A stretch of 64,000 nucleotides of DNA from Botryllus schlosseri (GCA_051294905.1 JBPPKV010000017.1:1798001-1862000); one strand, 5' to 3'; positions 31,851 to 61,351 are shown, numbered from the stretch's first letter. Notes: generated by a model not told the origin, from the sequence alone. Program-made: numbers and translations.

Positions 31851-33637
31851 CTGGACGACTTAGGCTTTGACTTGGACTTCGGCGTCGATTTGGACTTTGG
31901 CTTCGATTTGGATTCCGGGTTCGATTTGGACTTTGGCTTTGATTTGGATTCCGGGTTCGATTTGGACCTTGGCTTCGATTTGGATTTCGTGTTCGATTTG
32001 GACTTTGGCTTCGATTTGGATTTCGGGTTCGATTTGGACTTTGGCTTCGATTTGGAGTTCGCCATACCAGCGGGTGTTGTGTTTTGCTCCCGTGATCTGT
32101 GATCTGTCGTAGATTTGGCAACTGAATTTTGGTGTCCTATATTTCCAATACTACTACTCATTTTGATTCTAATATAATCTGTAAAAATTGTGTATCCATG
32201 ATTCTAATTAAATTTTAAAAAACTGTGTAGCTCTAATTCTTACACTATTATAATTTCTAGAAATTTGTGCAATTTAAATTCTAATCTAATTTGGAAAAAC
32301 TGAAGGTTTCCTAGTTCTACAAGTCTGGTCTCAGAAGCCATCTGGCTGTTAACCAGCGTAATCTAATACTGACCTTCATATCCAATTTCAGATACCGAAG
32401 GAAGCTTTGGCGCTGGCCCTTTCCTACCGGAGGATGGTGAGACGGGCCTTTTCCTGCGTCTACTCTCTTGCCCGGAAGAGTCACTTGTTGCCAATCCTGG
32501 ACTGAGGTTACTGGAATCTGAATAAAGTATTAATTCCGATGAATTGACTGTACTGAAATTACACAATACTCGTTATTATGAGGTTGTTTCCCATGCATTG
32601 GTCAGATTTTAATATGTATTTTCGAGAGTACAACACTAGCTTTCGATTAAGTCCAGTTTTAATAAATGTTAGCGCACGGCTCGCCAGCTATAGGACTACA
32701 TATAACGCTGATTCTGCCATGCTCAGCAGTCAATCGCACGACTGGAGCTGTATATCTATCCGTAGGTTGGTAATCTATACTCCAACTGTGGGACTCACTT
32801 TCCGAAAGCTGTTGAGCACCGTGTGTCTTCGCCGAGGGAAGAGAGTTCAACCAGGACTGGATTCGTTTTGTCTTCTCGGCCTTGGACGGCGATGCGGACA
32901 AGGCAATCCCGCTGCGACTAACGAAACATTCAGTTACCGTAACACATATATTTCACAGCATATTTCATACTTTGAGGTTATGCAAATAAACATACCACAA
33001 AACAGGCACATAGCCAGCCGAGAAAAAGGGGGGTGTTTTGAAGAAAGGACGTGTTTCGAACACACGACGTTTTACATTCTATCGGATTTTTCAGGCTAAA
33101 TATATGCACAAGTGCATCTACTGCAGGAATCAGATAATATCGCACGTAATAACAACTCTACACTCATATACAAAGCCCCGCCAATGTTGAAGCGGGATTT
33201 CGCATTTAAATTAGTAGTGACCTCAACTTGATATCATACGACAGAACCAGTTTCACGAATGTTCATGTATCCTTTCAGGATATGTTAAACCCGACGTTTC
33301 AATCATTTTTATTTTGGCCCGTAACACACCCACAGAACCCAGTTGTATTATTAGGATATATAACCACTATCGTAAACTAAGATAACAGCAGAAAGATAAA
33401 TAAAGACATAATTTAACCAAAAGCGAAGCAGCACAATCAAGTTACAACATAGCGAGCTCACATCATATCAGATTTCACAAATTAAAATGTTCAATGCGGA
33501 ATCCAATACGAATTAGCTCAGTTGTTGAAATCACAACTGCCCACCTTTCTGATCTTCTGGCACTCGGGCCTGCCACTTCCTCCTGTTCCGTTGCCACCGC
33601 GGTTGACTCGGCAAAGGGAGCGCGTGCTCTATTTCTG
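31851..33637 (-). CDS. Exon-cassette unit 1 (D-C-B-A intact)
   Basis: D 33545-33637, C 32799-32911, B 32374-32517, A 31851-32121; AG/GT sites, phases 2-2, 2-1, 1-1, 1-2; open spliced frame ending in KSKPKSKSNP repeats. Confidence 0.75.
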
Positions 33638-35280
33638 CTGTTTGTTGATTACAGGTTAAAATCGAACCAACAAGATACGTAAAGGAAAATAATTTCCTCA
33701 CTAGAACTCGAATCTACCGATGTACGGAGCTGGATGATGACGACAATCATTCGAGTAAACCAATCAGAATCGAGTAATAATTCTAAAGATTCAAGCCGAG
33801 TAGAGAGATGATTTTTCCGTGGGGAAATTTAGGCTCTAATTTCAGCCGATGGGGTCCACTGTGTTAGAGTATATTTTGTAAAGCGGAAGTTTTATTTCTA
33901 AATTGAAAGCAGTGAATTACATTATTAACACATGCTGCTAACTGGAAATTATTATGCGGGGCTTGCTAAGATAGCTACATATTTTATGATGACATGATTC
34001 ATGTGTCTTCAACTCTTCATGCATGACGTCTATATCTTCTAATTTAGACAAATTGTGCTTACACTCTTTACCGAGTAGGCCTATAATTATATTAAAATAC
34101 TTCTGAATCGTTTTTTTTTTCTAGTGCCAGGCCTGATTTGCTTCATAACAAAATCACACGTATATGATGTGTGTGCAATGTGGTTATACAAGGCCGGACA
34201 AATTCATCCCGGTCTGCTTCAAACTTTGCACAAGTAGAATATGCCATTGTTGGGGTAGATTTTATACAGGCGTCAAATATCGCCGATACAAATTCCAGCA
34301 GAAAATTTTTTTAGAACTCTTTCACCTGGGAAGAAATTTCTTTTTTAGTTGGACAGAGAGTACCGTAATTTTCCATGAATAATGCGCCAAATTTAACAAA
34401 TTTTTTTTGTCCCAAGATCGAAAGGGTGCCTATTATGCATGGGTACAACTAGCCTTAAAAAAAAGATCCCTTGAAATCACACCTGTTTGTTTTAACCACG
34501 CATCACATTCAGCCAACGTGCCCAGTAATTCGCAGGCTTTGGCTGCTATCTACTATTGTTTCACAGAGACAATGCTGTTAAGTGTATAATGATTAGCGAT
34601 TGTTTTGTCATGATTGTTCAACAGTGACATCGCAAACAGAATGACATATACGAATAGTAAAACTTAATTATTCACGTACTGCGAATGCAGGGTGTGTACT
34701 ATACATGCGTACAGGCTTTTTTCCAGAATTTACATCCCATGGAAAATTACAGTAATTCTAGTTCTAGTTCTAGTTGCGGATATTGAAAAGTTGGTAGCTT
34801 GTCAGAATGTAAGATCGCCATCCAACATGTCAAATCTACGTCAGCGGTTTCAATTCTTACCAAAATTGACGGCCGGGACAGATTTTGTAACATTTCACCC
34901 GCCTCGGTAAAAGTTGTAACCTCGTCACGAGGTTCCCAGAAAAAAGTCAATTTCACTCATACAGTATGAATCGAGTCAGGTTGAGTCATTTTCAATTCAT
35001 CACTGTGTCAAGTCTGAGTCCGAGTCATGGGGCAAAGGATCCAAGCCATAGTGTTCGCAGTTCATTATCGAGTTCAAGCCAGTTTCAAATCAAAACACAA
35101 GACTCGAGTCAAGCCATATAGAATGTCTCGGGTCATATGACTTGGTCGATTTTAACACAATGACTCATGTCGAGTTCCGTCATTTTCCATGTATAACAAA
35201 ATTAGAGTCCAGTCGAACAAGAATTGCAACTCGAGTCATTACAACCAAGAGGAAAACATATTTACCGAGCGTGACCTCAC

Positions 35281-38200
35281 CTGGACGACTTGGGCGTCGA
35301 TTTGGCCTTGGGCGTTGACTGGAACTTTGGCGGCAACTTCGACTTTGCCGTCGACTTTGACTTGGCCTTCACAGCAGATCTTGCAGTTGGACCCCGTGAT
35401 CCGTCATCTGTCGTTGATTTTGCAACTGAATTTCGGTACCCAATATTTTCAATACCATATGTGCGCAACATCTCGCAGGATGTTCACAAGGACATTCCTT
35501 TCGTGCGGGGAAATTCAGAGTCAAGCCGCCATGGCATTACTCACACCGTACAGTCATAGTAGTTATTGTGACAAATAAAATACGCATGCTGGTATAGAAG
35601 AACCAATGATGATGATGAAGTTTTGAGCTTGCCAACATCTTCTATTTTCTATCAAAACAGGACGGCGGCGAAGAAAAAGACATAGTTAACAAAGGCATGT
35701 TCAGATCTACCAAAAAGAAAACATATCGTGGGATGAACTGGAAAGATATTTCGCAGCAGACAGTGAGAGCATGGGCTGTGATGTTTTGAGTTACTGGAAA
35801 AGAAAAATCGTTTTGCTCATCCCAGGGCCGCTCTTCGAGAACTCGTACGCATGACTACAACATCACCTCCGTTGGAAAGTGTTTTCAGCCATGCAAAGAG
35901 AACTGCATAGGGATAAAGAGAAAGATATTTTTATTGAACGAGCCAAGCTTGGTTTACAGACATTAATCATTCTCGTGCTTGATTCGATATGAACGAACTA
36001 CACTTGAATTTTGCTGCATATACTTTCTCATTCACAATTTCACGCAATTTTTGAGAATTCACTAATTCTAATACCAATCTAATATGGAAAAACTGTGTAA
36101 CTCCAATTCTAATTCTAACCTAATCTGTAAAATATTGTGCAATTCTAATTCTGATCTAATTTTAAAACACTGCGTAGCTCTGATTCTAATACTAATAAAA
36201 TTCGTGCAATTCTAATTCTGATCCAATTTGGTAAAACTGAAGAGTTTCTAGTTTTCCAAGTCTGGTATCAGAAGCCATTTGGCTGTTGACCAGCGAAATC
36301 TAACACTTACCTTCATATCCATATTCAGGTGCCGAGGGACGCTTTGGCGGTGGTCCGCTCCCATCAGATGATGGCGAGACGGGCCTTTTCCGGCAACTAG
36401 TCCCTTGCCTGGCAGAGCCCCCTGCGAGAAATCCAGGAATGCGGTTACTGGAATCTGAACAGAGTATTAATGCTGATGATTCGAGCGCACAGTGCATGTG
36501 AGCGTTAGGACAGGAGTCGCATATCTATCGTTAGGTTGGTAATCTATATTCCCACAGTTGGACTCACTTTTTGAAAGCTGTTGAGCCGAGGGTTTTGCTG
36601 CCGAGTGAGGAAAGTCCAACGAGGTCAGCAGACCTTTCGTTTTCTCTTCCTGGGACAGTTTGGTCTCCTCACACCTGCTACTAATAAAAAATGACATATA
36701 GCAATTTTCGAAAATGAATCAAGATTCTGTAACAACATACAATTTCCAGCATATTTCACAAGCATTTTCATATTTAGAGGTGATGCGAACGAAGAGGGAA
36801 AACTAGGTGGTGTTTCAAAAACAGGATGTTTTAAATTATATCGGATTTATTGGCCTATATATATGCACAAATGCCGCTACTGCAGGAATCAGATAATCTC
36901 GCATATATCAACAGCTCCACACTCATACAAAGCCCTGCCAATGACGAAGCGGGATTTCGCATGATTTCGCATTTTAATTAGTAGCGACATCAACTTGATA
37001 CCATACAACAGAACCCTTTAGACAAATGGTAATGTATCCCGTCAGAATATGCTATATCCAACCTTGGTAGGTTCTGCACTGTGAACCTTTTTCATATATT
37101 ACAATTTTCGCTACATTATAAGATCTTTGGTTGAAATTGATTGCATTTCAATTGCGGTCAACTCAATGCATGGCGCCGGCAGCGTAAAACAATCAACACT
37201 TAACGAGCATGCACCTTGACAATCTCAAAAATGTCTGCTGTGAGATTGACCCGCCATGACACAACGTCAAAAGCGAAACACACTACATATAGTCGGCGAA
37301 TGATGTTTATCCAACCAATCAACGAAATTAATATCGTTGTCTGATGTACAAAATCTAGCGGGCGTACATGGTCAATCTTGACTTCATATATATAATATAC
37401 TGTAAAAACCAAATCCGTGCGATTGGGGTGCTGGCTACTACTGTGTAACTTGTGAATGGGGTAGTATTAGCATCAAGTATAGAATCCCGCTTTGCACCCT
37501 AAATATCACACTCCGAATACATTGTCTGGACCGGCCTAGACCGTTACGGCGTAAGATTATATTCCTTGCAAGACGTCGTCGAATTTGTTGTCAAAGCGAC
37601 AGCAGATATGGATTTCATGGGATCATTATATTATTTGATTGCCCCAGTTGATACATTTGGCGATATTTAAAACGTCAATATGTATTTGAGCATTGTAGCA
37701 TTTTGTGGCCCGACTCATCGCTAGGCATCGTGTACAACTTATACATTTGTATACGCTGTCACTTCACTGAAATGTAGGCAAGGAATTACCAATATTACGT
37801 CACATGACGTCATGAGGTTCAGGTTCGCGTTCACACAGAACCTTTCAAAAAGGTTCACGTTCACACAAACCTGAACCTTTCAGAGGTTCACACCATCCCT
37901 ACTCTCTACCAAGAACAACAATTTTATTCTAATGTTCCTTAATGAGATTTTTCTCGTGCCAGGCATGAATTGCTACAATAGGAAATCATACTTACATGAT
38001 GTGTGTGCAATGTGAATACGCTATGCAAGATTGGACAATTTCATCCCGGTCTGTTTCTAACTTTGCACAAGTAGATTATGCCATTGTTGGGATAGATTTT
38101 AGTTGGGCGTCAAATATCGCTGATAAGAATTCAAGCAGAAATTTTTTAAAAACTCTTTCACCTGGGAAGAAATTTCTCTTTTAGTTGACGCACGCCTCCT

Positions 38201-38374
38201 GGTAGTAGGTTACCCATGGAATACGAGTCGTGACTCGACGCATCACTGCAGGTGGAGGAAATCTCGTCACCTGAAAAAATACGCATGTTCTATCCATCCG
38301 CCCAAGATCAGAGAAGGGAGACCAACGTCAAGTCCTACACACCTTCCCCCTCGCTTTCCTTGGGTTCCTGGACC
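35281..38374 (-). CDS. Exon-cassette unit 2 (E, C, B, A; D absent)
   Basis: E 38343-38374, C 36568-36674, B 36311-36454 (donor GTAAGT), A 35281-35425; E-C-B-A splices in frame. Confidence 0.7.
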
Positions 38375-39155
38375 CTGTTTGTGAATGGGCAGGTTAAAAT
38401 CGAACTAATAACATGTAAAGACGCCTCACTGGCACTCGAAACTGCCAATAGATAGTGTTGAATAATGATGCCAATGATATGACTCATCGAACATGAATTG
38501 AGAAATGAGTCCAACGATTCGAGTCAAGTATGACTTGACGATTATTTGAAGGACTCAAACTATATGCTCATTTACACCAAGAGTTAATTTGTCACAAGCC
38601 TTCTCAAGCAGGATTGGTCGTATTGAAGCATACGAAACTAACATTGGCGGAACAGAAACATCTGTGAAGTCCAAATGACTCGGCATTTTCACCAAGTGCA
38701 ATTGAATAGGCGGTGAAACAATGAGCGGAAGGGCGGCTGAAATTCCAAGAATATTTGGAGCACCAAATCGTCATTTATTGGAGTCCTATCAGTTTGTCGT
38801 GGGGAGGCCACCGTCCATCAACAGTAAAGTCTATTTCACCAGGCTGTACACTGCTCGGGAGGCAGCGACCTAGACAAGCTTTGCAGTATCCTAAACACAT
38901 TTTTATGATCCTAATAAAAAAATCATGTCAGTGAGTGAAAAAGAAAGTTCAAAATGTATCAGTTTCACTTTTGTTTGGAATGATGACGGCGAATATACCC
39001 CTGCCATATTGAATGTCTCAGGTCATATGACTTGGACGTGTTAATACACAGATAGTTACGTCATTTCACGAAATGACTCGACTCAAGTCAAAGAGGAATT
39101 GCAACTCGAGTCATTACAACCAAGGGCAAAACTGTTTTACTGAGCACGGCCTCAC

Positions 39156-42100
39156 CTTGTTGACTTGGCCTTGGGTGTCGGCTTGGACTTGGCCTTCCCA
39201 GCCGGCTCTGCGGTTGGCTCCCGTGAACTGTGATCTGTCGTTGATTTTGCAACTGAATTTGGGTGTCAAATGTTTCCAATACTACATGTCCGCGACATTT
39301 TGAAGGAGGCAATAAACCGTACAGTCATAATAGTTATTGACGAATAAAATACCCATGCTGGCATGGTAGCTTGTAGCCTGCAAACAACTTCTAGTTTCGA
39401 TCACAAACAGAACAGCACCCAAGAAAAATATCATGGTTAACACGGGCTTTTTAACAAATGCTCTCAACTACATCAAAAAAAGAGAAAGATTGCTTCAGAT
39501 CTGTCCAAAGAAAATATATTAGGGAACGAAGTGAAAAGATATTCCGCAGCAGAGCTCGAGAGCGTGAAATGCGATGTTTTGAGTTACCATAAAAAAGAAA
39601 TAATTTTGCTGATCCCAAGGCTGCTGCTCGACAACTCGTAGGTGTACCTGCAACATTATCTCCATCAAAAAGAGAACTGTATAGCGCGAAAGAGAGAGAG
39701 AGAGATAGTTTCAACAAACTAGCCAAGTTTGGTGTACGGGCGTTAAATTTTTTCTCATTCGGAATTTCATTCAATATTTGCGAATTAACTAATTCTAATC
39801 CAATTTGTAGAGGTTCTTGGAGGTACTAAACTTCAATATACAGTTGAGTAGTACATTCATATTGAAATGAACCCGGATATTTTCGGCTGACACTCGTCAG
39901 GGATAATCGTCAGCAACTTGTAGAGAATTGGAAAGAACGTTGCATATCAACAATCGTATCACAAAATATGATGTCAGCGGCATGAACTTTTGAATGATAG
40001 AGCGTTCAATGTACTATTTTAAAGTGGTACACGAACCCCTTTTGTTGACAGAGTTTTGGTTGGTGTATTTTGATAAAAGTAGACTCCAAGGCACACAAAT
40101 GGAATTGTGAACGGCCCCTCTCAACGAAACGAAATCTGTCGTCTGGATAATTATTCGCACAAATCGGATTATTTAACAGATGTTTGCCGATGGCAGAATC
40201 AGATCATCGGGATCGTCACTGCGTCTGCAGGAACGTGTAAACAACCGCGTCCCCATATTCATCAGAGCACATGTAACACGCTAGGTGAAAAGCTCACCGT
40301 TAACTCATCCGCTGAAACTTGATGCTGACCTATCAAAGGCCTTTAATTCTGTGATCGGCAAACATCTGTTAGATAATACGATTTGTGCGAATATTTATGG
40401 AGACGACAGATTTCGTGTCGTTGGGAGGGGTCGTTCACACTTCCGTGTGTGTGCCTTGGAGTCGACTTTTATCAGAAAACACCAACCAAAACTCTGCCAA
40501 CAAAAGGGTTTCGTGTACCACTCAAAAATAGTACATTGAACGCTCTCCCATTCGAAATTTCATGCTGGTGACGTCATATTTCGTGATACGATTGTTGATA
40601 TACAACGTTCTTTCCAATTCTCTACTAGTTGCTGACGATTACCCCTGACCAGTGTCAGCCGAAAATATTTGGGTTCATTTCAATATGAATATACTATTCA
40701 ATCAAATTTGGAAAAAACCGTGCAATAATAAATCTAATCTAATTTGGTAAAACTGTGTAGCTCTAATTCTAATACTAATCTAATTTGAAGAAAATTGTGT
40801 ACCTCTAATTCTAATCTCATTTTGAAAAACTGTGTAGCTCTAGTTATGATCTAATTTGGAAAAACTGTGTAGCTCCGATTCTAATTCAAATCTCATCCGA
40901 AAAACCGTATATCCCTAATTCTAATCCTAATATATCATGTAAAACGGAAGATTTTCTAGTTTTCCAAGTCTGGTCTCAGAAGCAATTTGGCTGTTGACCA
41001 GCGTCTTCTCATACTGACCTTCATATCCATATTCAGGTGCCGAGGGTGGCTTTGGCGCAGGCTCGCTCCCACCAGATGATGGCGAGACGGGCCGTTTCCC
41101 GCGTCTAACACCTTGCCTGGAACAACCCCTTCGCGGCGATCTTGGAATGCGGTCACTGGAGTCTGAATGGAGTATTGATTCTGATGAATCGAGTCGAGTA
41201 ATGAAATTATACGATCCTTCACTAAGAGTGAATTTATCAACGAGAATAATAGTTTTCATAATAAAGTGGAATCCTCGAAACCCCGGTAGTTCGTAACACA
41301 GCGCACGATACGCGTCGTACAAATCCATGCAAGTTGTGGAAACGACACTTCTCCGACGTCATGATCAACCCACAGAATTATCACCAAACTTGAACAAACT
41401 ATCGGCACCATTCTTTGGAATGATCCTCATGTTCAGATTTTGAGAGCTTTTTAAGGTTGGTTTCAATCATTGGGATCAAGTCACTACCTTCGAGTCACGA
41501 GTCATTTCGAGTCATTGCACATTTTGACTCGAGTCAAGTCAAGTCAATCGATTTTCGAACTTGACTCGAGTCAAGTCAAGTCACTTGAATTTTGGAGCTG
41601 ACTCGTGTCAAGTCGAGTCGAGTCAAGTCAAGTCACGAGTCAAGTCACAATTCAAGTCGAGTTGCCTTTTCGAAGTATGAGGCATGATGACGTCATTGCA
41701 TTTTGCTAGCTGTCTGAAATACAGATTGAGTGGTTATTGATTCTGGATCTATGAAGAAATAGAGTTAAATATAAACGCAAGAAGGTGCTTTATTACTCAC
41801 ATATACGTAGAAATGCTTAACTACGTAAGCATAATCGCCCTCTGATTATTATAGTTACCAGCCAAAATAGAGAATAGAGAAACGAGTTGATTAGATGCAA
41901 TACGTTGCCCATTTACAAATTGATATGATACAATTCCAGCCTGCGCCGATGGTTGCTGGCTGTATAATTTTATATTGGAATTCAATTTCAATAAAACAGG
42001 AGGCTTGGTTAAATTAGGAACTGAGAACAGAAGTATACATTTTGCTATTCAATTACTTTACTATACTAGTTCACGACAACGCAATTTGTAAGCTTCGATC

Positions 42101-44201
42101 ACTTTGTTTGCGATCAATTTATTTGTGAGGGAACAATGGAGGCTCAGTAAAACCCACGATCATCGAATGATTGGTCGCTCTCATGGGTTACATCATCTTT
42201 TCACGTATTATCCGAACGTATGCAAGATACAATGATTATTATCAACATCGATTGCTTGATGACTCAAAATTGACTCGTGAATTTTGCTCCGAGTCTCGAG
42301 TTAATCCACATTTCTGATACGCCGAGTCAAGTCAAGTCAAGTCATTTTAGCAAAGTGACTCGAGTCAAGTCAAGTCATACGAAAAAGGTGACTCGAGTCA
42401 AGTCATGACTCGAGTCATCCCAACACTGTCATAAGCCAGATTTTAATATGTATTTTTGAAATAAGTACAATACAAGTACAATATTAAGTCAAGTTTGATT
42501 AAATTTTAGCGCTAGCGTTGCCAGCAATAGGATTACCGTAACTTTTCAAGTATAGTACGTCCCCATTGATAATGCACATACTTAAAATGACATGCAAAAT
42601 CTGGAAAAAAGCCTGCACCCATGTATAGTGCACACACTGCATTCGCGGTACATGAATAGTTGTGTTATGGTATACGATGTTATTGTGTTGGTGGTGTCAC
42701 TGTTCAACAATCATGACGTAACGATCGCTGATCATTATACAGTTAGCGGCATGGTCTCTAAATGATAGTAGATGGCAGATAAAGCCTGCGATAGTTCAGG
42801 GCAGCTAAAAGACATCTTGCGCACGAGGCCTATTATAGATGCGATTGCTCAGTCCAACGGTTATGTCGTGCGCACCTGGAATGTTGCAGATGCGATAAAT
42901 TAGCAAGGATTACCGAGCAGGTTAGGAACAATCAATGACCTAATTTCACTCTCGTACAAACGGCTAACCAACATAACAGGAGATCGCATGCTGTTGTGCA
43001 GTGCAGACGCCTTTCAGTAATTGGCAGCGCGTAACATTGATAATACGAATTACTGGGCACGACGGCTGAATGTGATGCGTGATTAAAATGACAATGAGGA
43101 AAGGCGTGATTTCAAGTGTTATTTCGAGGGAGGTTTTTTTAGTGCTTTTTGCACCCGTGCACCCTCGGTTTTATGACAAAAAATCTGTAAAATTTTGTGC
43201 ATTATAAATAGAAAATTTCATTACTAATAATGTTGATTTTGCCTAACTCAGCAGTCAACCGCATTGTGCATGTGAGCGTGACGACAGGAGCCGCTTATCC
43301 ATCTTTAGGTTGATAATCTATACTCCTACAGTTAGACTCACTTTCCGAAACCTGCTTTGCTGCCGAGAGAAAACTGTTTTGGTGCCGCTGTTGTGCTGCA
43401 GAGAGAAGGGAGTCCACTAAGGCCTGTATAGGTTTCATTATCCCTCCAGTAGACGGTGCAGTTTCCTCACACCTGCTATTTACAATAAATGACTTGTAGC
43501 AATTTTCCAAAATAAATTTCGTTACCGTAGCAAATATATATTTCGCAGCATATTTCACAAGCATGTTTCGTACTTTGAGGTTATATAAAACAACATACCA
43601 CCGCCAGGCGCGTAGCAAAGGGAGAAAAATAGGGGGTGTTTCGATACAGGATTTTTTAAATTATATCGGATTTATCTGGCTAAATATATGAAAAAACGCC
43701 GCTACTGCAGGAACCAGATGATCTCGCACATATCGACCCCGCGAATGTCGTACCAGGAGACGATATGATTTCGCATTCATATAAGTAGGGGCCTTAACTT
43801 GATATCATAACACAGAAACCGATGTTTCAATCTTTTTTATTTCGGCCCGTAGCGCACCCACGGAACCCAGTTGCAACATTAAGATATAGCCCAACTATGG
43901 TAAGCGAAGATAACAGCAAAAAAAACAAAGACATAATTTGTCCTTGATTACCAAAAGGGAAGCAGCCCGATCAAGTTACAACACAAAGACCTTGCCATTT
44001 TTTGGTCAAACAAGAACATGATTCCAATTCCGCATCAAATCAGATTTCACAAATAAAATGTTCAATGAGGAATCTGTTATGTACTGATAAAATCTAAGAT
44101 GAATTAGCTCGTTTGTTGGAATAACAACTGCCCACCTTGCTGATGTTCTGGCACTCGGGCCTGCCAAATCCTCCTGTTCTCTTATTGCCTCGGCAAAGAG
44201 A
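39156..44201 (-). CDS. Exon-cassette unit 3 (5'-truncated D, C, B, A) with Penelope and hAT insertions in introns
   Basis: D remnant 44136-44201, C 43342-43472 (+24 nt in frame), B 41019-41162, A 39156-39252. Confidence 0.7.
39871..39904 (-). ncRNA. Minimal type I hammerhead ribozyme motif in the inverted Penelope pLTR
   Basis: Minus strand TATCC-CTGACGA-GTGTCAGCC-GAAA-ATATCC-GGGT; intact CUGAnGA/GAAA core, one change in stem III. Confidence 0.55.
40641..40674 (+). ncRNA. Minimal type I hammerhead ribozyme motif in the Penelope pLTR (mutated core)
   Basis: ACCC-CTGACCA-GTGTCAGCC-GAAA-ATATTT-GGGT; palindromic AATATT stem III; core G to C change. Confidence 0.5.
41468..42428. mobile_element. 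hAT-type MITE, third copy of the 932 family
   Basis: 5' end CA(gtg deleted)TTGGGATCAAGTC, 3' end ATCCCAACACTG; follows GTTTCAAT; empty site in unit 4 (45157-45175). Confidence 0.85.
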
Positions 44202-53200: not shown

Positions 53201-53988
53201 ATGATGAAAACAATCATTCGAGTAATCGAATAAGAATCGAGTGATAATTCTAAAAATTCAAGCGGAGTAGAGATCGGACGATTTCTACGAGGGCGAATTT
53301 AGGCTCAAACTTCGGCAAATGGGGTCCCCGAGATGAAAAAAGGTTGGGAACCATTGGGTTTGAGTATATTTTGTACAGTAGTTTTATTTCTGTATTAAAA
53401 GCAGTGAATTTCATCAACACATACTGCTGACTGGAAATGTTTATAAAGGTCTTCGTACGATAGCCACAGGTTTTATGGTGGCATGATACATTTGTCTTCC
53501 TGCGTGGTGTCTATATCTTATCATTTTGACAAATTATGCTTAATCTCTATTCTGATTATTCTGATAGTTCTGCATGAGATTTTTCTTGTGCCAGGCATGA
53601 ATCGCTACAATAGGAAATCACATTTACAGGATGTGTGTGCAAAGTGAATATGCAAAGTCGTACAATTTCAACCGGGTCTGTTCCAAACTTTGCCATTGCT
53701 GGGGTAGATTTTATTTAGGCATCAAATATCGCCGATACGAACTCAATCAGTAATTTTTAAAAAACTCTTTCACCTGGGAAGAAATTTCTTTTTTAGTTGA
53801 CGCACGCCTCCTGGTAGTAGGTTACCCATGGAATACGAGTCGTGACTCGACGCATCACTGCAGGTGAAGGAAATCTTGTCACCTGAAAAAAAATACCCAT
53901 GTGCTAACCATCGGCCCAAGATCAGAGAAGAGAGAGCAACGTCAAGTCCTACACACCTTCCCCCTCGCTTTCCTTGGGTTCCTGGACC
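50289..53988 (-). CDS. Exon-cassette unit 5 (E, C, A; B and most of D deleted)
   Basis: E 53957-53988, C 52599-52705, A 50289-50403; lost exons D (2-2) and B (1-1) are symmetric, so E-C-A stays in frame. Confidence 0.65.
51076..52294. mobile_element. hAT-type MITE with (GCTCCG)n subterminal repeats
   Basis: TIRs CAGGGCTTTGGAGC / GCTCCAAAGCCCTG; exact 8-bp TSD GTTTCAAT. Confidence 0.9.
51223..51873. mobile_element. hAT-type MITE nested in 51076-52294
   Basis: Ends CAGGGGTGGGCC / GGCCATTCCTG; exact 8-bp TSD GTCTATAT. Confidence 0.85.
52317..52385 (+). mobile_element. 69-nt Penelope pLTR tail insertion
   Basis: Matches the pLTR tail at 39810-39875 (minus) and 40670-40700; flanked by AGATT duplication; absent from paralogous units. 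Confidence 0.75.
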
Positions 53989-54186
53989 CTGTTTGTAAAT
54001 AGGCAGGTTAAAATCGAACTAATAAAAATGTAAAGACGCCTCACTGGCACCCGAAACCACCAATGGACAGTGTTGGATGAAGACGCCAATGATATGAACA
54101 CTCGAGTCTGAATCGAAAAATTATTTTAATGATTCGAGTCAAGTATGACTAGATGATTACTTCAAGTACTCAAACTATATGCTCAT

Positions 54187-55803
54187 TAGGGTTGTCCAAA
54201 ATTTGGAAAATCTTACAAATCCTCCGTTGTAATGTCTTATTCTATAGATTATTGATAAAAAACGACATTAGGCCTAAAAGAAGCTCACAAGGAGGCCGTT
54301 AAGATTTCGTGCAAAGCGTTTGAAAGTAGCTGCTGAAGAATGGGCGTGCCACCGACCATAGAACGGCGAGAAGACTAGTAATCACGAAACCACGGCTCTT
54401 AATTGGCTAATCTGCTATGCTTCAATGACCACGACAGCAGCAGCTTGCTGATTAGGTGATCAAGGAGTCTGCTATCGGCGGCGATTCTGAAAGCGCATTG
54501 TATGTTGGTTGACAGATTATGATTTAGGATTGATTCAGGGTATGTTGAGGTACGAAATACATGATGAACAAACCAAATACATGATGAACAAACCACAGCT
54601 GCTTCACAAAAACGTCTAAAGCATGACCGCTTTACTGTGAAGGAAACCGCCGTAGCCTATATGCCTTGTTTTCAACGAGGGAAAGCATAGGTGCTTATGC
54701 AAGTGGCGATCGATTCCTGGTTTCAGAACGGATATATCATTATCGAATACAAATATAAAGCTTAACAACGACACTATAATTTGTGTGATCCTATTGGGCT
54801 CAGGTTGTAGTACATAGTTGAAGTTGTGAATGCTCTAGGGATCGGCTGAATCAGACGGTTAGGCCTGGCACTTAGCAGATGTTTACAGCAAATTGAATTC
54901 ACTTGTAAGCACACACATACTGTGCTTGATATGATATACAAACTATGCTGGATACTATGCAGTATGAAGTATTTTCTGTGCTTACCTTTACATTCCTTTT
55001 CTGCGCGTTTATTAAGGACTTTGCCACATCATTGACATATCATATCCAGCATAGTATGTGCTTACTATTACACCGCTTTCCTGGTTCATCATTAAGGACT
55101 TTGACAACAATTGCAAGTGAATACAATTTGATGTAAGCACCTGATAAGAACCAAGCATAACCCGCCGATTCTTAGAGCATTCAAAACTTCAACTATGTAC
55201 TACCACCTGAGCCCAATAAGATCACACCACTAAGAGTGTCGTTGTTAAGCTTTATATTTGTATTCAATAATGATATATCCTTTCTAAAACTAGGAATCCA
55301 TCGCCACTTGCATAAGCGCCTATGCTTTCCCTCGTTGAAAACAAGGCATATAGGCTGCGGCGGTTTCCTTCACAATAAAGCGGTCATGCTTTGGACGTTT
55401 TTGTGAAGCAGCTGTTGTTTGTTCTTCATGTATTTCTTACCTCAACATACCCTGAATCAATCCCAAACCATTATCTGCCAACCTACATGCAATGCGCTTT
55501 CACAATCGCCGCCGGTAGCAGACTTCTTGATCACCTAATCAACAAGCTGCTGCTCTCGTGGCCATTGAAGCATAGCCGATTGGCAAATCAAGAGCCGTGA
55601 TTTCGTGATTACTAGTCTTCACGCCGTTCTATGGTCGGTGGCACGCCCATTCTTAGGCAGCTACTTTCAAACGCTTTGCACGAAATCTTAACGGCCTTAC
55701 TGTGAGTTTCTTTTAGGCCCATTGTCGTTTTTTATCAATAATCTATAGAATAAGACATTACAACGGAGGATTTGTAAGATTTTCCAAATTTTGGACAACC
55801 CTA
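54187..55803. mobile_element. Foldback element with about 700-bp inverted arms and hAT-like ends
   Basis: TAGGGTTGTCCAAAATTTGG.. / ..CCAAATTTTGGACAACCCTA; arms about 54187-54910 and 55110-55803; exact 8-bp TSD ATGCTCAT; empty site at 38563-38575. Confidence 0.9.
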
Positions 55804-56708
55804 ATGCTCATTTACACCAAGAGTTAATTTGTCACAAGCCTTCTCAAGTTAAATTGGTCGTATTGAAGCATACAAAACTAACGTTGGTGGAGCAGAGATA
55901 TCAGTTAAGTCATGAATGATTCAGCATTTTTACAAAGTGTAATCGAACAGGCGATGAAACGATGAGCGGGCGGATGGCCGAAATTTCAAGAATATTTGGC
56001 GCACTAAATCTTCGTTTATTGGAGTCGGGGGCGGACCCGTCTTATTATTTTGTCCCGAGCAGGTCGCCTTGGACTATAATTTAAGTCGGTGTTACGGCAA
56101 AAAGACAAAGACAGACACTCGGCTAATGGAGGACGCGTTTCGGAAGCACTGCTACTTTCCATCAACAATAAAGTCTATTTCACCAGGCTGTAGACTGCTC
56201 CAGAGGCAGCGACCAAGACAATCTTTGTAGTATCTTCAATACATTTTTCATTATCCCAATAAAAAATTGTGTCAGAGGGTTGAAAAAGAGTTTAAAATTT
56301 ATCATTTGGACCATTGTTTTGAATTATGACTGCGAATAAATACTATATTTGATAATTAACCAACACTTCCTCGTTGTCAAATACCAACAGATCCGCAGGG
56401 CACCATGTATTAACAATGTAATTCACTGCTTTCCATTTAGAAATACAAAAAAAAACAGGATATAATTAAAATTTTTGACTCGGCTCACCAACTTATTTTC
56501 TGCGATCATTTGGCCCGCGGGGATAATAATCGCCAACTCCTACCATATTGAATGTCATATGACTTGGTCGGGTTAATACAAAACTTGAGTCAAGTCAAGT
56601 TACGTGATTTTCCCTGTATAACAAAATGACTCGAGTAAAGTCAAAGAAAAATTGCAACTCGAGTCATTAGAACCCAGGGCAAAACTTATTCACCGAGCAC
56701 AACCTCAC

Positions 56709-59700
56709 CTGGACGACTTGGTCTTTGGCGTCGACTTTGGCGTCAACTTGGTCTTTGGTGTCGACTTTGGTGTCGACTTCGACGTCAACTTGGTCTTTAG
56801 TGTCGACTTTGACGTTAACTTGAGCTTCGGCATCGTCTTTGACATCAACTTGGCCTTGGACGTCGACTTTGACGTCAACTTGGCCTTGGGCGTCGACTTT
56901 GAGGTCAACTTGGCCTTGGGCGTCAACTTTGACTTGGCCTTCCCAGCATGTCTTGTAGTTGACTCCCGTGAACTGTGATCTGTTGTGGAATTCGCAACTG
57001 AATTTTGGTGTCAAATATTTCCAATGCTATATGTCTGTGACACTTTGCAGGACGTCATACATCATACAGTCATAGTAGGTATTGAGACGAATAAAATACC
57101 CATGCAGGCACAGTATCTTGTGGCCTGTGAACAATTTCTAGGTATAATCACCAACAGAACAGCACTACAGAAGAAAAAGCCTTAGTTAACACAGGCCTTT
57201 TTACACATGCTCTCAACTACATCAAGTAAAAAGTGGAAGATTGCTTCAGATCTATCTAAAGAAAATATATTAGGGAATGAAGTGGAAAGACATTTCTCAG
57301 CAGAGCTTGAGAACACAGAATGTGATGTTTAGAGTTACTGGAGCTCAGCACGAGAACTCGCAAGTGTGCGCACAGCATCACCTCCATCGGAGAGAGTTTT
57401 CAGACATGGATGCAAGAGAACTGTACGGTGGGTTTAAGAGAGAGAGTATCATTAAACCAGCCAAGCTTGGCGTACAGAAGTTGATCATTATCATGCTTGA
57501 TTTGCTGTGAGCTGAACTTGAATTTTGCTGCTCATTCGGAATTTCAATCAATATATATGCGAATTAACTTATTCTAATCTAATTTGGAGAAAATTGTATA
57601 GCGCTAATTCTAATCTAATTTAGAAAAACTTTGTAGCTTCAATTCTAATTCTAATCTAATTCATAAATAAGTGTGCCATTTTAATTCCAATCTGATTTGG
57701 TAAAACTGCGTAGCTCTTATTCTAATAATAATCTAATTTGGAAAAAAATTTGTATTTTTAATTCTAAATGTAATTTGGAAAAAACGCATATCTCTAATTC
57801 TAATTGTAATTCTAATCCATTTCGTAAAGTTTAAGATTTTCTAGTTTTCCAAGTCTGGTCTCAGAAGCAATTTGGCTGTTGACCAGCGAAATCTTATACT
57901 GACCTTCAGATCCATGTTCAGGTGCCGAGGGTGGCTTTGGCGCAGGCCAGCTTCCACCAGGTGATGGCGAGACGGGCCTTTTTCCGCGTCTAGTACCTTG
58001 CCTGGAAGATCCCCTGCGTGGCAATCCTGGAATGCGGTCGCTGGAACCTGAATAAAGTATTGATTCTGATGATTCGGGTCGAGTACTGAAATTATACGAT
58101 CCTTGTCAATAAAGACTGGGTCACATTCTCGTGAAATCGTACCGCGTACGATTCTCACCATCTCACTAAATTGGCCAAAATGAGCGATTACGTAATCGCT
58201 GAACGAAAAGTGAGAATAAAGGTAGCGCTGTTTCGCATGTTGTCGCTGCCTAGCGTCAGCCGAGCCTCTCGCGACCTCTTATTGCGGGTATCAATTCTCG
58301 CAATTTAGCTCGTCGAGTCCACAATACGCTCGTACGAATCGCTCTCCCCGCATAAGGTCTGCGTAAGGTCCGCGTAAAAAACGAGAGAGAGGAGGCTTTT
58401 TACGCGCCAAGCAAACGAGAGAAAAGAAAGGAAAGAAACTAAAGAAATGCTTTACGCGCCCTACACGCCATACGATTTTACTTACAATGTGACTGATGCT
58501 TAAGAGTGAATTTATCAACGAGAATAATAGTTGTCCTAATAAAGTGAAATCCTTGAGACCACGATTGGCCGTAACACAGCTTACGATACACGTCGTACAA
58601 CTCCATGCAAGTAGCGGAAACGACACTTCTCTGAAGTTATGATCAACCCACTGAATTATCACCAAACTTGAACAAACTACCAGCACCAGTCTTTGCAACG
58701 ATCCTCAAGTTCAGATTTTGAGGTTGGTTCTAATAAACTGGCCAGATTTTCTCAATTATTTTTAAAGCAAGTACGACACTAGCTTGCGATTAAGTCAAGT
58801 TTGATTGAATTTTAGCGATCGAGTTGCCAGCTATAGGACGACCAGTAACGCCGATTTTGCCCGGCCCAGCAGTCGACCTCATTGTGTATGTTAGCTTGAC
58901 GACAGGAGCTGCATATCTATCCTTAGGTTGGTAATCGATACTCTTACAGTTGGACTCACTTTTTGAAAGCTGTTGAGCAGTGGGCTTTGCTGCCGACGAA
59001 AGAGAGTCCAATAAGGTCTGCAGACACTTCGTTTTCTCTTCCTTAGACCGTACGGTCTCCTCACACCTGCTACTAACAAAAAATGACTTGTAGCGATATT
59101 CGAAAATAAATTCAGTTACTCCAAAAAATATATATCACAGCCTATTTTGCAAGCATGTTTCATACAGAGAAATAAAAGGGGCGTTTCAAGAATAGGATGT
59201 TATAAATTATATCAGATTTGTAACACTAAATATATGTACAAATGCCTCTACTGCAAGAATCACACAATATCGCACATAATAACAACACCATACATAACCC
59301 CGCCAATGTCGTAGCAAGAGACCTTATGATTTCGCATTCAAATAAGCAGCAACCTCAATTTGATATCATACAACAGGACCAGTTTCACACGTGGCAATGC
59401 ATCCCGTCAGAATATGTCATACCCGACCTTTCAATCTTTTTATATTTCAGCCCGTAGCAGACCCAAAGAAGCCAGTTGTATTAATAAGATATAGGAAATA
59501 CTTGAAAGCTGGTTCGTGGTACTATAGATAACTAACCTACGGATAGATATCCAACACCCGTCGTCACGCTTGCTTGCCCGGAGGAAATTACTGCTCAGCA
59601 ATCTGAACGCAGCATAATTGCTGATCCCATACCTGACGACCCGCGCCTAAATTCAATAAAGTTGATCTTCTTTGAAAGCTACTGTCGCACTACTTCCGAA

Positions 59701-61351
59701 AATATACATTAAAATCAGACCAGGGCAATGAAACCCCCTTGAAATACACCTCAAAGTCTGAAAATCGGCATTGTTCTGAACAATCGCAGTGACGCATAAC
59801 AATGACCATAACAATGGTCCTTGCGTGGTTGCGATTGTTCAGAACAATGCATATTTTCAGACTTTTAGGTGTATTTCAAGGGGGTTTCATTGCCCTGATG
59901 AGATTTTAATGTATATTTTCGGAATCAGTGCGACGTTAGCTTTCAAATAAGACCAACTTTATTGCATTCAGGCGCGCGGGTCGTCAGCTATGGGATTAGC
60001 AATTATGCCGCGTTCAGATTGCTGAGCAGTAATTTCCTCCGGGCAAGCAAGCGTGACGACGGGTGTTGGGTATCTATCCGTAGGTTAGTTATCTATAGTG
60101 GTAAAGAACTTGATTATAGCTATCAATTCAAGATCCATTGTAAAAGTGTGCAGCTAACTCTTGAAAAGAGGCACCCGAAAATTCTTCGAGTTCAATGAAT
60201 ATTCTTTTGCAATGGATGTTGTATTGAAAGCCGTGATATAGGCCTAGCACCGCTATGGTAAGCAAAGATAACAGCAGAAAGAGAAACAAAGGTATAATTT
60301 GTTCTTGATTACCAAAAGTGAAGCAGCGCGATCAAGTTACAACACAAAGATCTTGCCATTTTTCGTTCAAACAAGAACATGATCTCGATTCCGTATCATA
60401 TCAAATTTCACAAATTAGAATGTTCAATGCGGAATCTGTTATGTATTCATAAAATTGACGATGAATTAGCTCGGTTGTTGGAATAACAACTGCCCACCTT
60501 GCTGATGTTCCGGTACTCGGTCCTGCCAAATCCTGCTGTTCTCTCACCGATGCGACAAAGGGACTGCGAGATCTCGTTTTGCTGTTTGTTGATTGAAGGT
60601 TAAAATCGAACCAACCAGAAACATAAAGGAAAATAAACTCCTCACAAGTACTTGAAAATGCCGATGGACAATGTTGGATGATGAAGACAATCATTGGAGT
60701 AATTGAATCAGAATCGAGAAAGAATTCTAAAGATTAAAGCCGAGTAGAGAGCGGATGATTTCTACGAGGGAAAATTTAGGCTCCAATCTTAGCCAATGGG
60801 TCCACAAGATAAAAAAAAGGGTTGATATCCGCTGGGTTAGAGTATATTTTACGAAATAAGAGTTTTATTTCTAAATTGAAAGCAGTGAATTACATTGCTA
60901 ACATATGCTGCTGACTGGAAATGTTTATATGAGGCTTGGTACGATAGCTACAGGTTCCATGGTGTCGTGATACAATTGTCTCTCTGCGTGGTGTTTATAT
61001 CTTATAATTTAGACAAATTAGGCTCACTCTTTACCAAGTACAACAATTTTATTCTAATATTTCTTAATGAGATTTTTCTCGTGCCAGGCAAATATCGCCG
61101 ATACAAACTCAAGCAGAATTTTTCAAAAACTCTTTCACCTGAGAAGAAATTTCTTTTTTAGTTGACGCACATTTCCTGGTAGTAGGTTACCCATAGAATA
61201 TGAGTCGACGGTCGACACCTCACTGCAGGTGGAGGAAATCTCATCACCTGAAAAAATACGCATGTGCTATCCATCCGCCGGAGATCATAGAAGGGAGAGC
61301 AACGACAAATCATACACACCTTCCCCCTGGCTTTCCTTGGATTCCCGGACC
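56709..61351 (-). CDS. Exon-cassette unit 6 (complete E-D-C-B-A, 656 nt spliced, open)
   Basis: E 61320-61351, D 60498-60581, C 58960-59066, B 57904-58047, A 56709-56997: GPGIQGKPGGSKTRSRSPFVASVREQQDLAGPSTGTSARCEETVRSKEEKTKCLQTLLDSLSSAAKPTAQQLSKSSSDRIPGLPRRGSSRQGTRRGKRPVSPSPGGSWPAPKPPSAPEHGSEVANSTTDHSSRESTTRHAGKAKSKLTPKAKLTSKSTPK...KSS; start codon not found. Confidence 0.75.
57560..57830. repeat. Degenerate CTAATTCTAATCTAATTTGG-AAAAACTGTGTAGCT array in the B-A intron (also 32150-32310, 36060-36240, 40700-40930, 44400-44610, 50920-51000)
   Basis: Repeated units of about 30-35 bp, copy number differing between cassette units. Confidence 0.8.
58113..58500. mobile_element. PIF/Harbinger-type MITE
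   Basis: Ends AGACTGGGTCACATT / AATGTGACTGATGCT; 3-bp TSD TAA; empty site CACTAAG(A/G)GTGAATTT in units 3, 4 and 5. Confidence 0.75.
59522..60098. mobile_element. Near-perfect foldback MITE (about 265-bp arms, short loop)
   Basis: CTATAGATAACTAACCTACGGATAG.. / ..CTATCCGTAGGTTAGTTATCTATAG; TGGTA on both flanks; related sequence near 23.0-23.25 kb and 51.9 kb. Confidence 0.85.

What the first reader, a model, noticed from the sequence alone, without database searches (positions are those of the whole stretch)
31851..61351. Six-unit tandem array of phase-compatible exon cassettes hidden in apparent repeat DNA
Seen: five small minus-strand exons recur in six units with AG/GT sites. All 6 C, 5 B and 5 A copies keep the frame. 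Length changes are multiples of 3 (C 107/113/131; D 84/93; A 97/115/145/271/289). Substitutions in KRPVSPSS and AAKP fall mainly at synonymous positions. The introns around them are full of TEs and deletions. Phases are D 2-2, C 2-1, B 1-1, A 1-2, so (D)-C-(B)-A is a symmetric block. Exon A ends AG|GT in all five copies, with no conserved AATAAA, and its following TGA is TGG in unit 1, so A looks internal. Inference: either one long gene with a modular, possibly alternatively spliced, repeat protein, or a tandem family of small basic proteins.
Basis: partly seen in the sequence, partly recalled or inferred. Interest (0 to 1): 0.88.

Follow-up and report, generated by a model that had tools for sequence, protein, structure and literature searches.

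The report
Tandem five-exon cassettes, probably one gene
A 30-kb stretch of sea-squirt DNA that looks like decayed repeats holds about five tandem copies of a five-exon coding module kept free of stops and frameshifts. They most likely form one long gene for a serine/lysine-rich disordered protein with no detectable relatives, which is a real but familiar kind of gene architecture.

Summary
The exons are real. On the minus strand of 31.7-61.7 kb I recovered 24 exon copies: E x4, D x4, C x6, B x5, A x5.

Three tests show selection for an open frame:
- No stop occurs in the spliced frame, against 11.3 expected from 273 substitutions. The other two frames match the neutral expectation.
- No frameshifting indel occurs, against about 11.5 expected from the flanking introns. 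The four exon indels are 3, 6, 6 and 24 nt.
- Conservation peaks on the exons plus about 75-100 nt of adjacent intron.

Residue identity is only weakly constrained (dN/dS about 0.64), as fits a disordered protein.

- D is 109/100 nt, not 93/84. The symmetric block is E+D (141 nt).
- "Units" 3 and 4 are one module with an internal C-B duplication that breaks the frame unless one pair is skipped.
- A conserved AATAAA does lie 376-688 nt downstream of A.

Skipping either C-B pair gives an 882-890-aa ORF that ends at a TGA followed by AATAAA. No unit has its own conserved start codon, so I favour one long gene.

I found no homologue, no Pfam domain and no transcript data. This is a new member of a known kind, of modest interest.

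The parts
31694..61704 (-). Whole tandem array: five modules, one of them (units 3+4) carrying an internal C-B duplication
   Evidence: Self-BLAST and dot plot; projection onto unit 6; pairwise identities 62-91% with mosaic relationships between units
61320..61351 (-). Exon E, unit 6 (32 nt; 1 lead nt + 10 codons + 1 tail nt)
   Evidence: the most conserved exon (p = 0.052)
61139..61247 (-). Exon D, unit 6 (109 nt; lead 2, tail 2)
58960..59066 (-). Exon C, unit 6 (107 nt; lead 1, tail 1; AAKP motif)
57904..58047 (-). Exon B, unit 6 (144 nt; lead 2, tail 1; KRPVSPS motif)
56709..56997 (-). Exon A, unit 6 (289 nt; lead 2, tail 2; 30-nt S/T-P-K coding minisatellite)
53957..53988 (-). Exon E, unit 5
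53774..53882 (-). Exon D, unit 5 (109 nt)
52599..52705 (-). Exon C, unit 5 (107 nt)
50289..50403 (-). Exon A, unit 5 (115 nt). Unit 5 has no B; C-to-A stays in frame
49429..49460 (-). Exon E, unit 4
49256..49355 (-). Exon D, unit 4 (100 nt; in-frame deletions of 6 and 3 nt)
46146..46252 (-). Exon C, unit 4 (107 nt); first copy of the duplicated C-B pair
44703..44846 (-). Exon B, unit 4 (144 nt). Splicing B4 to C3 is out of frame
43342..43472 (-). Exon C, unit 3 (131 nt; +24 nt in frame); second copy of the duplicated C-B pair
41019..41162 (-). Exon B, unit 3 (144 nt)
39156..39252 (-). Exon A, unit 3 (97 nt)
38343..38374 (-). Exon E, unit 2
38162..38270 (-). Exon D, unit 2 (109 nt)
36568..36674 (-). 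Exon C, unit 2 (107 nt)
36311..36454 (-). Exon B, unit 2 (144 nt)
35281..35425 (-). Exon A, unit 2 (145 nt)
34328..34351 (-). 3' stump of exon D in unit 1 (QLKKKFLP plus the donor); its 5' part and acceptor are lost
32799..32911 (-). Exon C, unit 1 (113 nt; rearranged 5' end with a different AG)
32374..32517 (-). Exon B, unit 1 (144 nt)
31851..32121 (-). Exon A, unit 1 (271 nt; 18/36-nt KSKPKS coding minisatellite; donor GTGGGG)
31075..31180 (-). Candidate single-copy last exon. It has a strong acceptor at 31180, is in frame with A1, and carries TGA at 31120-31122 and AATAAA at 31090-31095. Alternatively it is a 50-nt internal exon ending at the CAG|GTAAGC donor at 31131
   Evidence: Sequence read; in-frame chain; AATAAA. 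Inferred, not verified
61670..61782 (-). Speculative first coding exon: an ATG, 37 codons and 2 tail nt, with a GTCAGT donor present only in unit 6
   Evidence: The only ATG-to-donor candidate with the right phase in 61352-64000. The homologous donor is degraded in the internal units. Weak inference
21030..21520 (+). Two decayed tandem copies of exon B plus its proximal intron, in inverted orientation outside the array. Copy 1 is net +10 nt with a stop before the donor; copy 2 has 5 nt inserted at the donor

Best explanation
One lineage-specific protein-coding gene on the minus strand grew by tandem duplication of a cassette of roughly 4-6 kb that contains five small exons, E-D-C-B-A, and their introns.

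The cassette is 681 nt of coding sequence in unit 6, or 227 codons. Its end phases match, so successive cassettes splice in frame. The sub-blocks E+D (141 nt) and B (144 nt) are themselves multiples of 3 and have been lost from some cassettes without breaking the frame.

One cassette later duplicated only its C-B segment. That segment is 251 or 275 nt, which is not a multiple of 3. The two C-B pairs must therefore be used alternatively; if both are included the frame shifts and stops in C3.

Exon A is a coding minisatellite whose S/T-P-K-rich repeat expanded independently in different cassettes.

The product would be a basic protein of at least about 880 aa (pI about 10; Ser 18%, Lys 14%, Pro 9%, Thr 8%). 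It is predicted to be largely disordered. Selection keeps it open and in frame but hardly constrains individual residues.

Shown: the exon copies, splice sites, phases, purging of stops and frameshifts, and the continuous spliced ORF. Inferred: that all cassettes are joined in one mRNA, the first and last exons, the alternative use of the C-B pairs, and any function. The polybasic S/T-P-x-K tracts and KRPVSP motifs suggest a phospho-regulated protein that binds nucleic acid or chromatin; this is low-confidence.
For: - Array and unit map.
- All 24 exon copies have AG and GT and are open in the splice-dictated frame.
- Stops in that frame: 0 seen against 11.3 expected from 273 substitutions (0 of 2000 simulations reached 0). 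The two other frames behave neutrally, at 12 against 12.4 and 40 against 37.1.
- Indels inside exons are 3, 6, 6 and 24 nt. The 150-nt intron flanks hold 56 indels, 36 of them not multiples of 3. That predicts about 11.5 frameshifting indels in the 478 aligned exon nt, and none is seen.
- dN/dS is 0.64 in the claimed frame, against 1.02 and 0.95 in the other frames.
- Divergence from consensus is 0.03-0.2 in the exons and the first 75-100 intron nt. It rises to 0.2-0.37 deeper in the introns.
- A 110-codon intronic ORF in unit 6 is broken by stops in other units. This is a negative control.
- One-gene reading, phases: they chain A to E to D to C to B to A.
- One-gene reading, start codons: no unit has a conserved ATG or first exon, and the first ATGs in exon D of units 6, 5 and 2 are out of frame (read from the sequences).
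- One-gene reading, units 1 and 3: they lack E/D yet stay stop-free (0 against 4.66 expected, P about 0.01).
- One-gene reading, continuous ORF: skipping either C-B pair gives an uninterrupted 882- or 890-aa ORF ending at a TGA, with AATAAA starting 25 nt after it.
- Minisatellite periods in exon A (18, 30, 36, 42 nt) are all multiples of 3. Most non-coding arrays in the window are not (35, 37, 41, 77, 80 nt).
Against: - No RNA or protein evidence is available with these tools.
- An exhaustive HMMER search with the exon-B profile against 1.84 billion representative proteins found only one spurious hit. Pfam and the ESM Atlas gave nothing. No annotated protein, from this genome or any other, supports the model.
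- With all exons included, the B4-C3 junction shifts the frame and stops at residue 486. The single-gene reading therefore needs exon skipping there.
- Substitutions show no significant third-position excess (70/78/84), and pN is about equal to pS in B and D.
- A conserved AATAAA lies 376-688 nt downstream of A in three spacers, and TGA directly follows A in four of five units. Both are compatible with A being a last exon.
- The exons were chosen partly because they are open, so the stop test carries some selection bias. That bias is partly offset because splice phases fix the frames, and because the indel test is independent.
- The 5' end of the gene was not found convincingly within the window.
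Confidence: 0.55

Rival explanations
1. A tandem family of separate small genes. Each unit would be its own transcription unit (or an operon member resolved by spliced-leader trans-splicing). Exon A would be the last exon, ending ...KSSR-TGA. The 3' UTR would run about 400 nt to the conserved AATAAA, giving several basic proteins of about 200 aa.
For: TGA follows A immediately in four of five units. AATAAA is conserved at 56020, 49856 and 38779 in the A-to-E spacers, about 75 nt before the next unit's homology begins. An in-frame ATG (SYSMGNLL) is present in exon D of units 6, 5 and 2. The scan's notes identify the genome as an ascidian with spliced-leader trans-splicing.
Against: No conserved start exon exists. 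The ATG-bearing upstream stretches differ in frame between units. The first ATG downstream of the E acceptor is out of frame in units 6, 5 and 2. Unit 4 has deleted the in-frame ATG, and units 1 and 3 have no E/D at all, yet their exons stay open (P about 0.01). E and the 5' half of D would be untranslated, but they carry no stop and only in-frame indels. The TGA is an automatic consequence of a GTGAG donor after a phase-2 exon end. The donor at the end of A is intact in all five copies.
Confidence: 0.17
2. A dying or already dead array. The cassettes were coding while they duplicated, but the locus is now an untranslated or NMD-targeted transcript, and the open frames are only what remains.
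For: The B4-C3 junction is out of frame. Unit 1 has a truncated D and a weakened A donor, GTGGGG. pN is about equal to pS in B and D. No homologue or annotated protein was found. The introns carry heavy insertions and deletions.
Against: The purging of stops and frameshifts is measured on changes that arose after the duplications. About 273 substitutions and dozens of flank indels accumulated in that time, so selection acted for most of the array's history, including in the most diverged unit 1. A very recent death cannot be excluded.
Confidence: 0.15
3. Not a gene. The unit would be a dispersed transposon or satellite-like repeat, and its open segments and AG/GT sites would be chance.
For: Decayed copies of exon B with its flanks lie outside the array, inverted, at 21.0-21.5 kb, inside a segment bounded by about 530-bp inverted repeats. 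Exon A is open in several frames, as any period-3n repeat is. Identity between units is fairly uniform at coarse scale.
Against: Only B has extra copies in the window. E, D, C and A have none. There are no transposon protein domains. Stops and frameshifts are depleted only in the spliced frame, with neutral behaviour in control frames and in an intronic ORF. Five exon types have mutually consistent phases.
Confidence: 0.05

Closest known systems
LPA kringle IV type 2 array (5.5-kb two-exon cassette repeated in tandem inside one gene); my own knowledge, not tested here
   Same: A multi-exon unit, with its introns, is repeated head to tail inside a gene. The cassette length is a multiple of 3, so any copy number stays in frame. 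The array grows and shrinks by unequal recombination.
   Different: The LPA units are nearly identical and encode a folded kringle domain. Here the units are 62-91% identical, have five exons, have lost different exons, and encode low-complexity sequence with no recognisable domain.
NBPF Olduvai (DUF1220) and nebulin super-repeat arrays; my own knowledge
   Same: Intragenic segmental duplications of several small exons at a time, with symmetric phases.
   Different: Those encode recognised domains or repeats with Pfam models, and none matches here. Those are vertebrate families with known transcripts.
Treacle (TCOF1) / Nopp140 (NOLC1) type nucleolar phosphoproteins; my own knowledge
   Same: Modular exon-encoded repeats alternate serine-rich acidic stretches (here DEISSTCSEVSTVDSYS) with Lys/Pro/Ser/Thr/Ala-rich basic stretches. 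The proteins are disordered, weakly conserved and strongly basic overall.
   Different: Their repeat is a single exon. No sequence similarity or Pfam match was found. Membership is not supported; the resemblance is one of composition only.
S/T-P-x-K tails of linker histone H1 and sperm histones, and KSP repeats of neurofilament H; my own knowledge
   Same: Exon A encodes runs of TPKA/TPKS/KPKS-type motifs in a lysine-rich tract whose repeat number varies between copies.
   Different: There is no linker-histone globular domain or intermediate-filament rod. The fourth residue of the motif is usually A, S or T rather than K or R.
[quoted passage not shown]
   Same: The adjacent homologous pairs C4-B4 and C3-B3 are each 2 mod 3 in length. 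Including both shifts the frame and stops in C3; including either one alone keeps the frame.
   Different: Here the alternative unit would be a two-exon pair rather than a single exon. Mutual exclusivity is inferred from phases only, with no transcript evidence.

Membership tests
Intragenic tandem multi-exon cassette array | Head-to-tail units that include both exons and introns | tested here: met
   Self-BLAST, dot plot and projection onto unit 6
Intragenic tandem multi-exon cassette array | The same exon set with intact splice sites in each unit | tested here: met
   24 of 24 exon copies have AG and GT. Exon sets differ by loss of E+D, B or A
Intragenic tandem multi-exon cassette array | Cassette length a multiple of 3, with matching end phases | tested here: met
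   32+109+107+144+289 = 681 nt. A ends with 2 nt, and E and C begin with 1 nt. Continuous 882/890-aa ORF
Intragenic tandem multi-exon cassette array | One transcript spans all units | not testable with these tools
   No RNA data. Indirect support only: no per-unit start codon, and units without E/D stay open
Protein-coding sequence under selection | Depletion of stops and frameshifts specific to one frame | tested here: met
   0 stops against 11.3 expected, with control frames neutral. 0 frameshifting indels against about 11.5 expected
Protein-coding sequence under selection | dN/dS clearly below 1, or a third-position excess | tested here: inconclusive
   dN/dS 0.64 against 1.02 and 0.95 in the other frames. 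Codon positions 70/78/84, p = 0.53
Tandem family of independent small genes | Each unit has its own start codon or first exon | tested here: not met
   No conserved ATG exon upstream of E. First ATGs in exon D of units 6, 5 and 2 are out of frame. Units 1 and 3 lack E/D
Tandem family of independent small genes | Each unit has its own stop codon and poly(A) signal | tested here: inconclusive
   TGA follows A in 4 of 5 units but overlaps the donor GTGAG. AATAAA is conserved 376-688 nt downstream in three spacers
Transposable element / dispersed repeat | Transposon protein domains or terminal repeats bounding the unit | tested here: not met
   No Pfam hit for any exon product. No terminal repeats at unit borders
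Transposable element / dispersed repeat | Many dispersed copies in the genome | not testable with these tools
   Within the window only exon B has extra, decayed copies, at 21.0-21.5 kb. The genome-wide count is unavailable
Linker histone H1 / SPKK basic nuclear proteins | Winged-helix globular domain (Pfam Linker_histone) | tested here: not met
   No Pfam match at E <= 1
Treacle / Nopp140 family | Sequence or profile similarity to the family | tested here: not met
   No Pfam match. The HMMER profile search of exon B found no relative
Frame-enforced mutually exclusive exons | Adjacent homologous exons whose joint inclusion breaks the frame | tested here: met
   C-B pairs are 251 and 275 nt. 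Including both gives a stop at aa 486; including either alone gives a full ORF. The pairs are 83-86% identical
Frame-enforced mutually exclusive exons | Transcripts contain one or the other, never both | not testable with these tools
   No RNA data

The most novel reading that the evidence does not exclude
The locus is a diversity generator. Symmetric sub-blocks (E+D, B, whole cassettes) and the frame-enforced alternative C-B pairs would be spliced combinatorially. The exon-A coding minisatellites and the cassette number would vary between individuals. Exon cores that evolve faster than their tightly conserved proximal introns would reflect diversifying selection. Together these would give a hypervariable family of basic disordered proteins from one taxon-restricted ascidian gene, for example in gamete or self/non-self recognition.
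Probability: 0.1. Interest if true: 0.6.

Novelty: new member of a known kind. Interest (0 to 1): 0.35.

Why it matters
This shows that a region which looks like decayed repeat DNA, with no long ORF, no domain hit and no homologue, can still be shown from sequence alone to hold a selected gene. The paralogous cassettes act as internal replicates for testing purging of stops and frameshifts.

For annotating this ascidian genome, it adds a taxon-restricted gene of about 30 kb that homology-based pipelines would miss or mask.

Biologically it is a clean example of gene growth by multi-exon cassette duplication. It shows in-frame loss of symmetric sub-blocks, an out-of-frame internal duplication that should force alternative splicing, and independently expanding coding minisatellites.

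It does not change what is known about how such genes arise.

Tried and rejected
- Coarse conservation profile (50-nt bins of BLAST HSPs). Identity looked uniformly 80-90% and suggested no exon islands. Finer per-block alignments later showed islands made of each exon plus its proximal intron.
- Homology searches. The HMMER profile of the five exon-B peptides against 1.84 billion representatives gave one hit, a bacterial-type repeat protein matching only 20 profile positions, which I judged spurious. Pfam on the exon products and on the ten longest ORFs of the window found only a decayed retroelement RNase H at 14.2-14.5 kb. The ESM Atlas feature search with exon A gave no meaningful hit. Rfam found nothing in the window.
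- Word-index protein search. I did not spend one, because its length filter (0.55-1.75 times the query) would exclude a product of about 900 aa for any stop-free reference I could give, and I did not type a long spliced sequence.
- Other coding segments. The 110-codon ORF in the unit-6 D-C intron (60404-60733) is broken in other units. tblastn of all exon peptides against the window found only the B-like copies at 21 kb. K/S/T/P-rich ORFs occur only in the A exons.
- RNA structure in the very conserved intron stretch downstream of B. It forms a small hairpin with no covariation, so I make no claim.
- Plus-strand gene. The reverse strand of exon A is also open (D/F/G-rich), but the conserved AG...GT boundaries are canonical only on the minus strand.
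- Literature search for an ascidian lysine-rich tandem-repeat gene returned nothing relevant.

Full report
**Context**

The window is eukaryotic DNA of about 41% G+C, with no N runs, no long ORFs and no Rfam match. Earlier notes of this scan identify the genome as a sea squirt. I did not verify that myself.

**Is the array there?**

Self-BLAST and a dot plot show a degenerate head-to-tail array from about 31.7 to 61.7 kb. I projected everything onto the top unit (56554-61704). This gives:

| Unit | Window coordinates |
|---|---|
| u1 | 31694-34351 |
| u2 | 35132-38711 |
| u3 | 39068-44182 |
| u4 | 44209-49796 |
| u5 | 50119-55956 |
| u6 | 56554-61704 |

Large unit-specific insertions, deletions and inverted repeats separate the homologous blocks.

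**Are the exons there?**

Block alignments and pattern searches recover five exon types on the minus strand.

| Exon | Length (nt) | Copies |
|---|---|---|
| E | 32 | 4 |
| D | 109, or 100 in u4 | 4, plus a 3' stump in u1 |
| C | 107 x4, 131 in u3, 113 in u1 | 6 |
| B | 144 | 5 |
| A | 289 / 115 / 97 / 145 / 271 | 5 |

- All 24 copies are preceded by AG and followed by GT. Donors are close to consensus (GTGAGT, GTAAGT/GTCAGT, GTGTGT, GTGAAA, GTGAGG). D, B and C have pyrimidine-rich acceptors.
- Counting the lead and tail nucleotides of split codons gives E 1/1, D 2/2, C 1/1, B 2/1 and A 2/2. The chain A to E to D to C to B to A is therefore in frame throughout. A complete cassette is 681 nt, or 227 codons.
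D alone is 1-2, and the 2-2 block is E+D (141 nt).

**Is it more than chance?**

*Stop codons.* I compared each copy with the majority consensus. I then scattered the same number of substitutions (273 in all) at random.
- Simulation gives 11.3 +/- 3.2 stops in the spliced frame. The real copies have none, and 0 of 2000 simulations reached that.
- In the two other frames, observed and simulated stops agree: 12 against 12.4, and 40 against 37.1.

*Indels.*
- The exon alignments (478 columns) hold four indels, of 3, 6, 6 and 24 nt.
- The ten 150-nt intron flanks hold 56 indels, of which 36 are not multiples of 3.
- At that density about 11.5 frameshifting indels would be expected in the exons, and none is seen.

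*Negative control.* A 110-codon ORF inside the u6 D-C intron lies in a block shared with other units, and it is interrupted by stops in them.

*Minisatellite periods.* Those inside exon A (18, 30, 36, 42 nt) are all multiples of 3. Most other arrays in the window are not.

*Selection bias.* The exons were noticed because they are open, so the stop test has some bias. However, once one exon's frame is set, the splice sites fix all the others. The indel test is also independent of the stop test.

**How constrained is the protein?**

Only weakly.
- Nei-Gojobori sums give pN/pS of 0.149/0.158 in D, 0.285/0.447 in C, 0.197/0.223 in B and 0.165/0.348 in the non-repetitive start of A.
- dN/dS is 0.64 overall, against 1.02 and 0.95 when the same columns are read in the other frames.
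- Minimum changes by codon position are 70/78/84, which is not significant.
- At fine scale the exons and the first 75-100 nt of adjoining intron are 3-20% from consensus. Deeper intron is 20-37% from consensus.
- The proximal intron after B and after C is more conserved than the exon cores. This fits either splicing-regulatory constraint or fast protein evolution.

Frame integrity is what selection preserves here.

**One gene or several?**

Arguments for one gene:
- No unit has a conserved start. The stretches upstream of E that contain ATG differ in frame, or stop at once.
- The first ATG after the E acceptor is out of frame in u6, u5 and u2 (sequences).
- The in-frame ATG in D is deleted in u4. 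D is absent from u1 and u3.
- The exons of u1 and u3 are nevertheless stop-free, at 0 against 4.66 expected (P about 0.01).
- The parts missing from some units, E+D (141 nt) and B (144 nt), are both multiples of 3.
- Downstream of A1 lies a single-copy exon with a strong acceptor at 31180. It continues the frame to a TGA at 31120-31122, and an AATAAA follows at 31090-31095.
- In 61352-64000, the only ATG-to-donor segment with the right phase is 61670-61782. Its GTCAGT donor is degraded in the homologous stretch of the internal units. This is weak evidence for a first exon.

Arguments against:
- The region between B4 and C3 shows that u4 and u3 are one cassette in which the C-B segment was duplicated.
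- Each C-B pair is 2 mod 3 in length. With every exon included, the ORF stops at residue 486, inside C3. Skipping either pair gives an uninterrupted ORF of 882 or 890 residues down to the terminal TGA.
- Joint inclusion that breaks the frame is a known way in which duplicated exons become mutually exclusive (PMC5740500). Here that is inference only.
- A conserved AATAAA lies 376-688 nt downstream of A in three spacers. With the TGA that overlaps the A donor, it keeps the separate-genes reading alive.

I put about 0.55 on one gene, 0.17 on separate genes, 0.15 on a recently inactivated array and 0.05 on no gene.

**What is the product?**

- The 882-aa conceptual protein is 18.5% Ser, 13.6% Lys, 9.3% Pro and 8% Thr, with pI about 10.1.
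- Each cassette encodes four parts: a short acidic serine-rich piece; a probably helical K/E/L-rich piece with two or three Cys (D-C); a Pro/Arg/Ser-rich piece with the invariant KRPVSPS (B); and a polybasic S/T-P-K minisatellite (A).
- The A repeat differs between cassettes. It is a 10-residue unit in u6 and a 6/12-residue unit in u1.
- Nothing similar was found. The HMMER profile search of 1.84 billion representatives gave one spurious hit. Pfam gave nothing, and the ESM Atlas gave nothing useful.
- By composition it resembles H1-tail, treacle/Nopp140 or neurofilament-tail types of phospho-regulated polybasic disordered proteins. It fails every membership test I could run.

**How the array evolves**

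Relationships between units are mosaic. u5 is closest to u6 in the C and A blocks (about 90-91%) but closest to u2 in the E-D block (88%). u3, u4 and u6 group together in B. This pattern fits unequal crossing-over or gene conversion between cassettes.

**Verdict**

The most likely reading is a taxon-restricted single gene built from multi-exon cassettes. That is a new member of a well-known architectural kind, such as the LPA KIV-2, NBPF and nebulin arrays. Transcript data are the decisive missing piece.

Noticed in passing
window 21030-21520 (+), within 20322-24559: Two decayed tandem copies of exon B with about 45-95 nt of its flanking intron lie in inverted orientation, 10 kb outside the array. 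They sit inside a 4.2-kb segment bounded by about 530-bp inverted repeats (20322-20847 against 24039-24559, 76% identity). This may be a transposon that captured a gene fragment, or the source of exon B.
   Followed up: partly
window 57838-57888 and homologous positions after each B exon: An intron stretch of about 50 nt, starting 16 nt after the B donor, is about three times more conserved between units than exon B itself. It is also retained in the 21-kb copies. It folds into a small hairpin without covariation. It could be a splicing regulatory element.
   Followed up: partly
window 14154-14498 (-): An ORF fragment matches the reverse-transcriptase RNase H-like domain (PF17919, E = 1.4e-7). 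This is a decayed retroelement.
   Followed up: no
window 1497-3639 and 41667-42252: A repeat of about 0.4-0.6 kb rich in GACTCGAGTC-type palindromic motifs. It is present twice near the window start and once inside the unit-3 intron (76-82% identity), so it is probably a dispersed non-autonomous element.
   Followed up: no
window 59521-60099: A 580-bp perfect-register palindrome (90% self-complementary) is inserted in the unit-6 D-C intron. Related fragments lie at 23164-23236. It looks like a foldback or MITE-like element.
   Followed up: no
window 54184-54908 against 55111-55806, and 39844-40199 against 40346-40701: Two large inverted duplications (88-90% identity) lie inside array introns. 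The first includes a copy of the sequence upstream of exon E.
   Followed up: no
window 56020, 49856, 38779 (minus strand): An AATAAA inside a conserved GACTCCAATAAA block is found in three A-to-E spacers, about 75 nt before the next unit's homology starts. It could be a relic or an active poly(A) signal.
   Followed up: partly
window 36064-36159, 40696-40931, 44409-44571, 57571-57816: A non-coding minisatellite of 35-42-nt period (TAATTCTAATCTAATTTGGAAAAACTGTGTAGCTC-like) recurs in the intron just downstream of exon B in several units.
   Followed up: no
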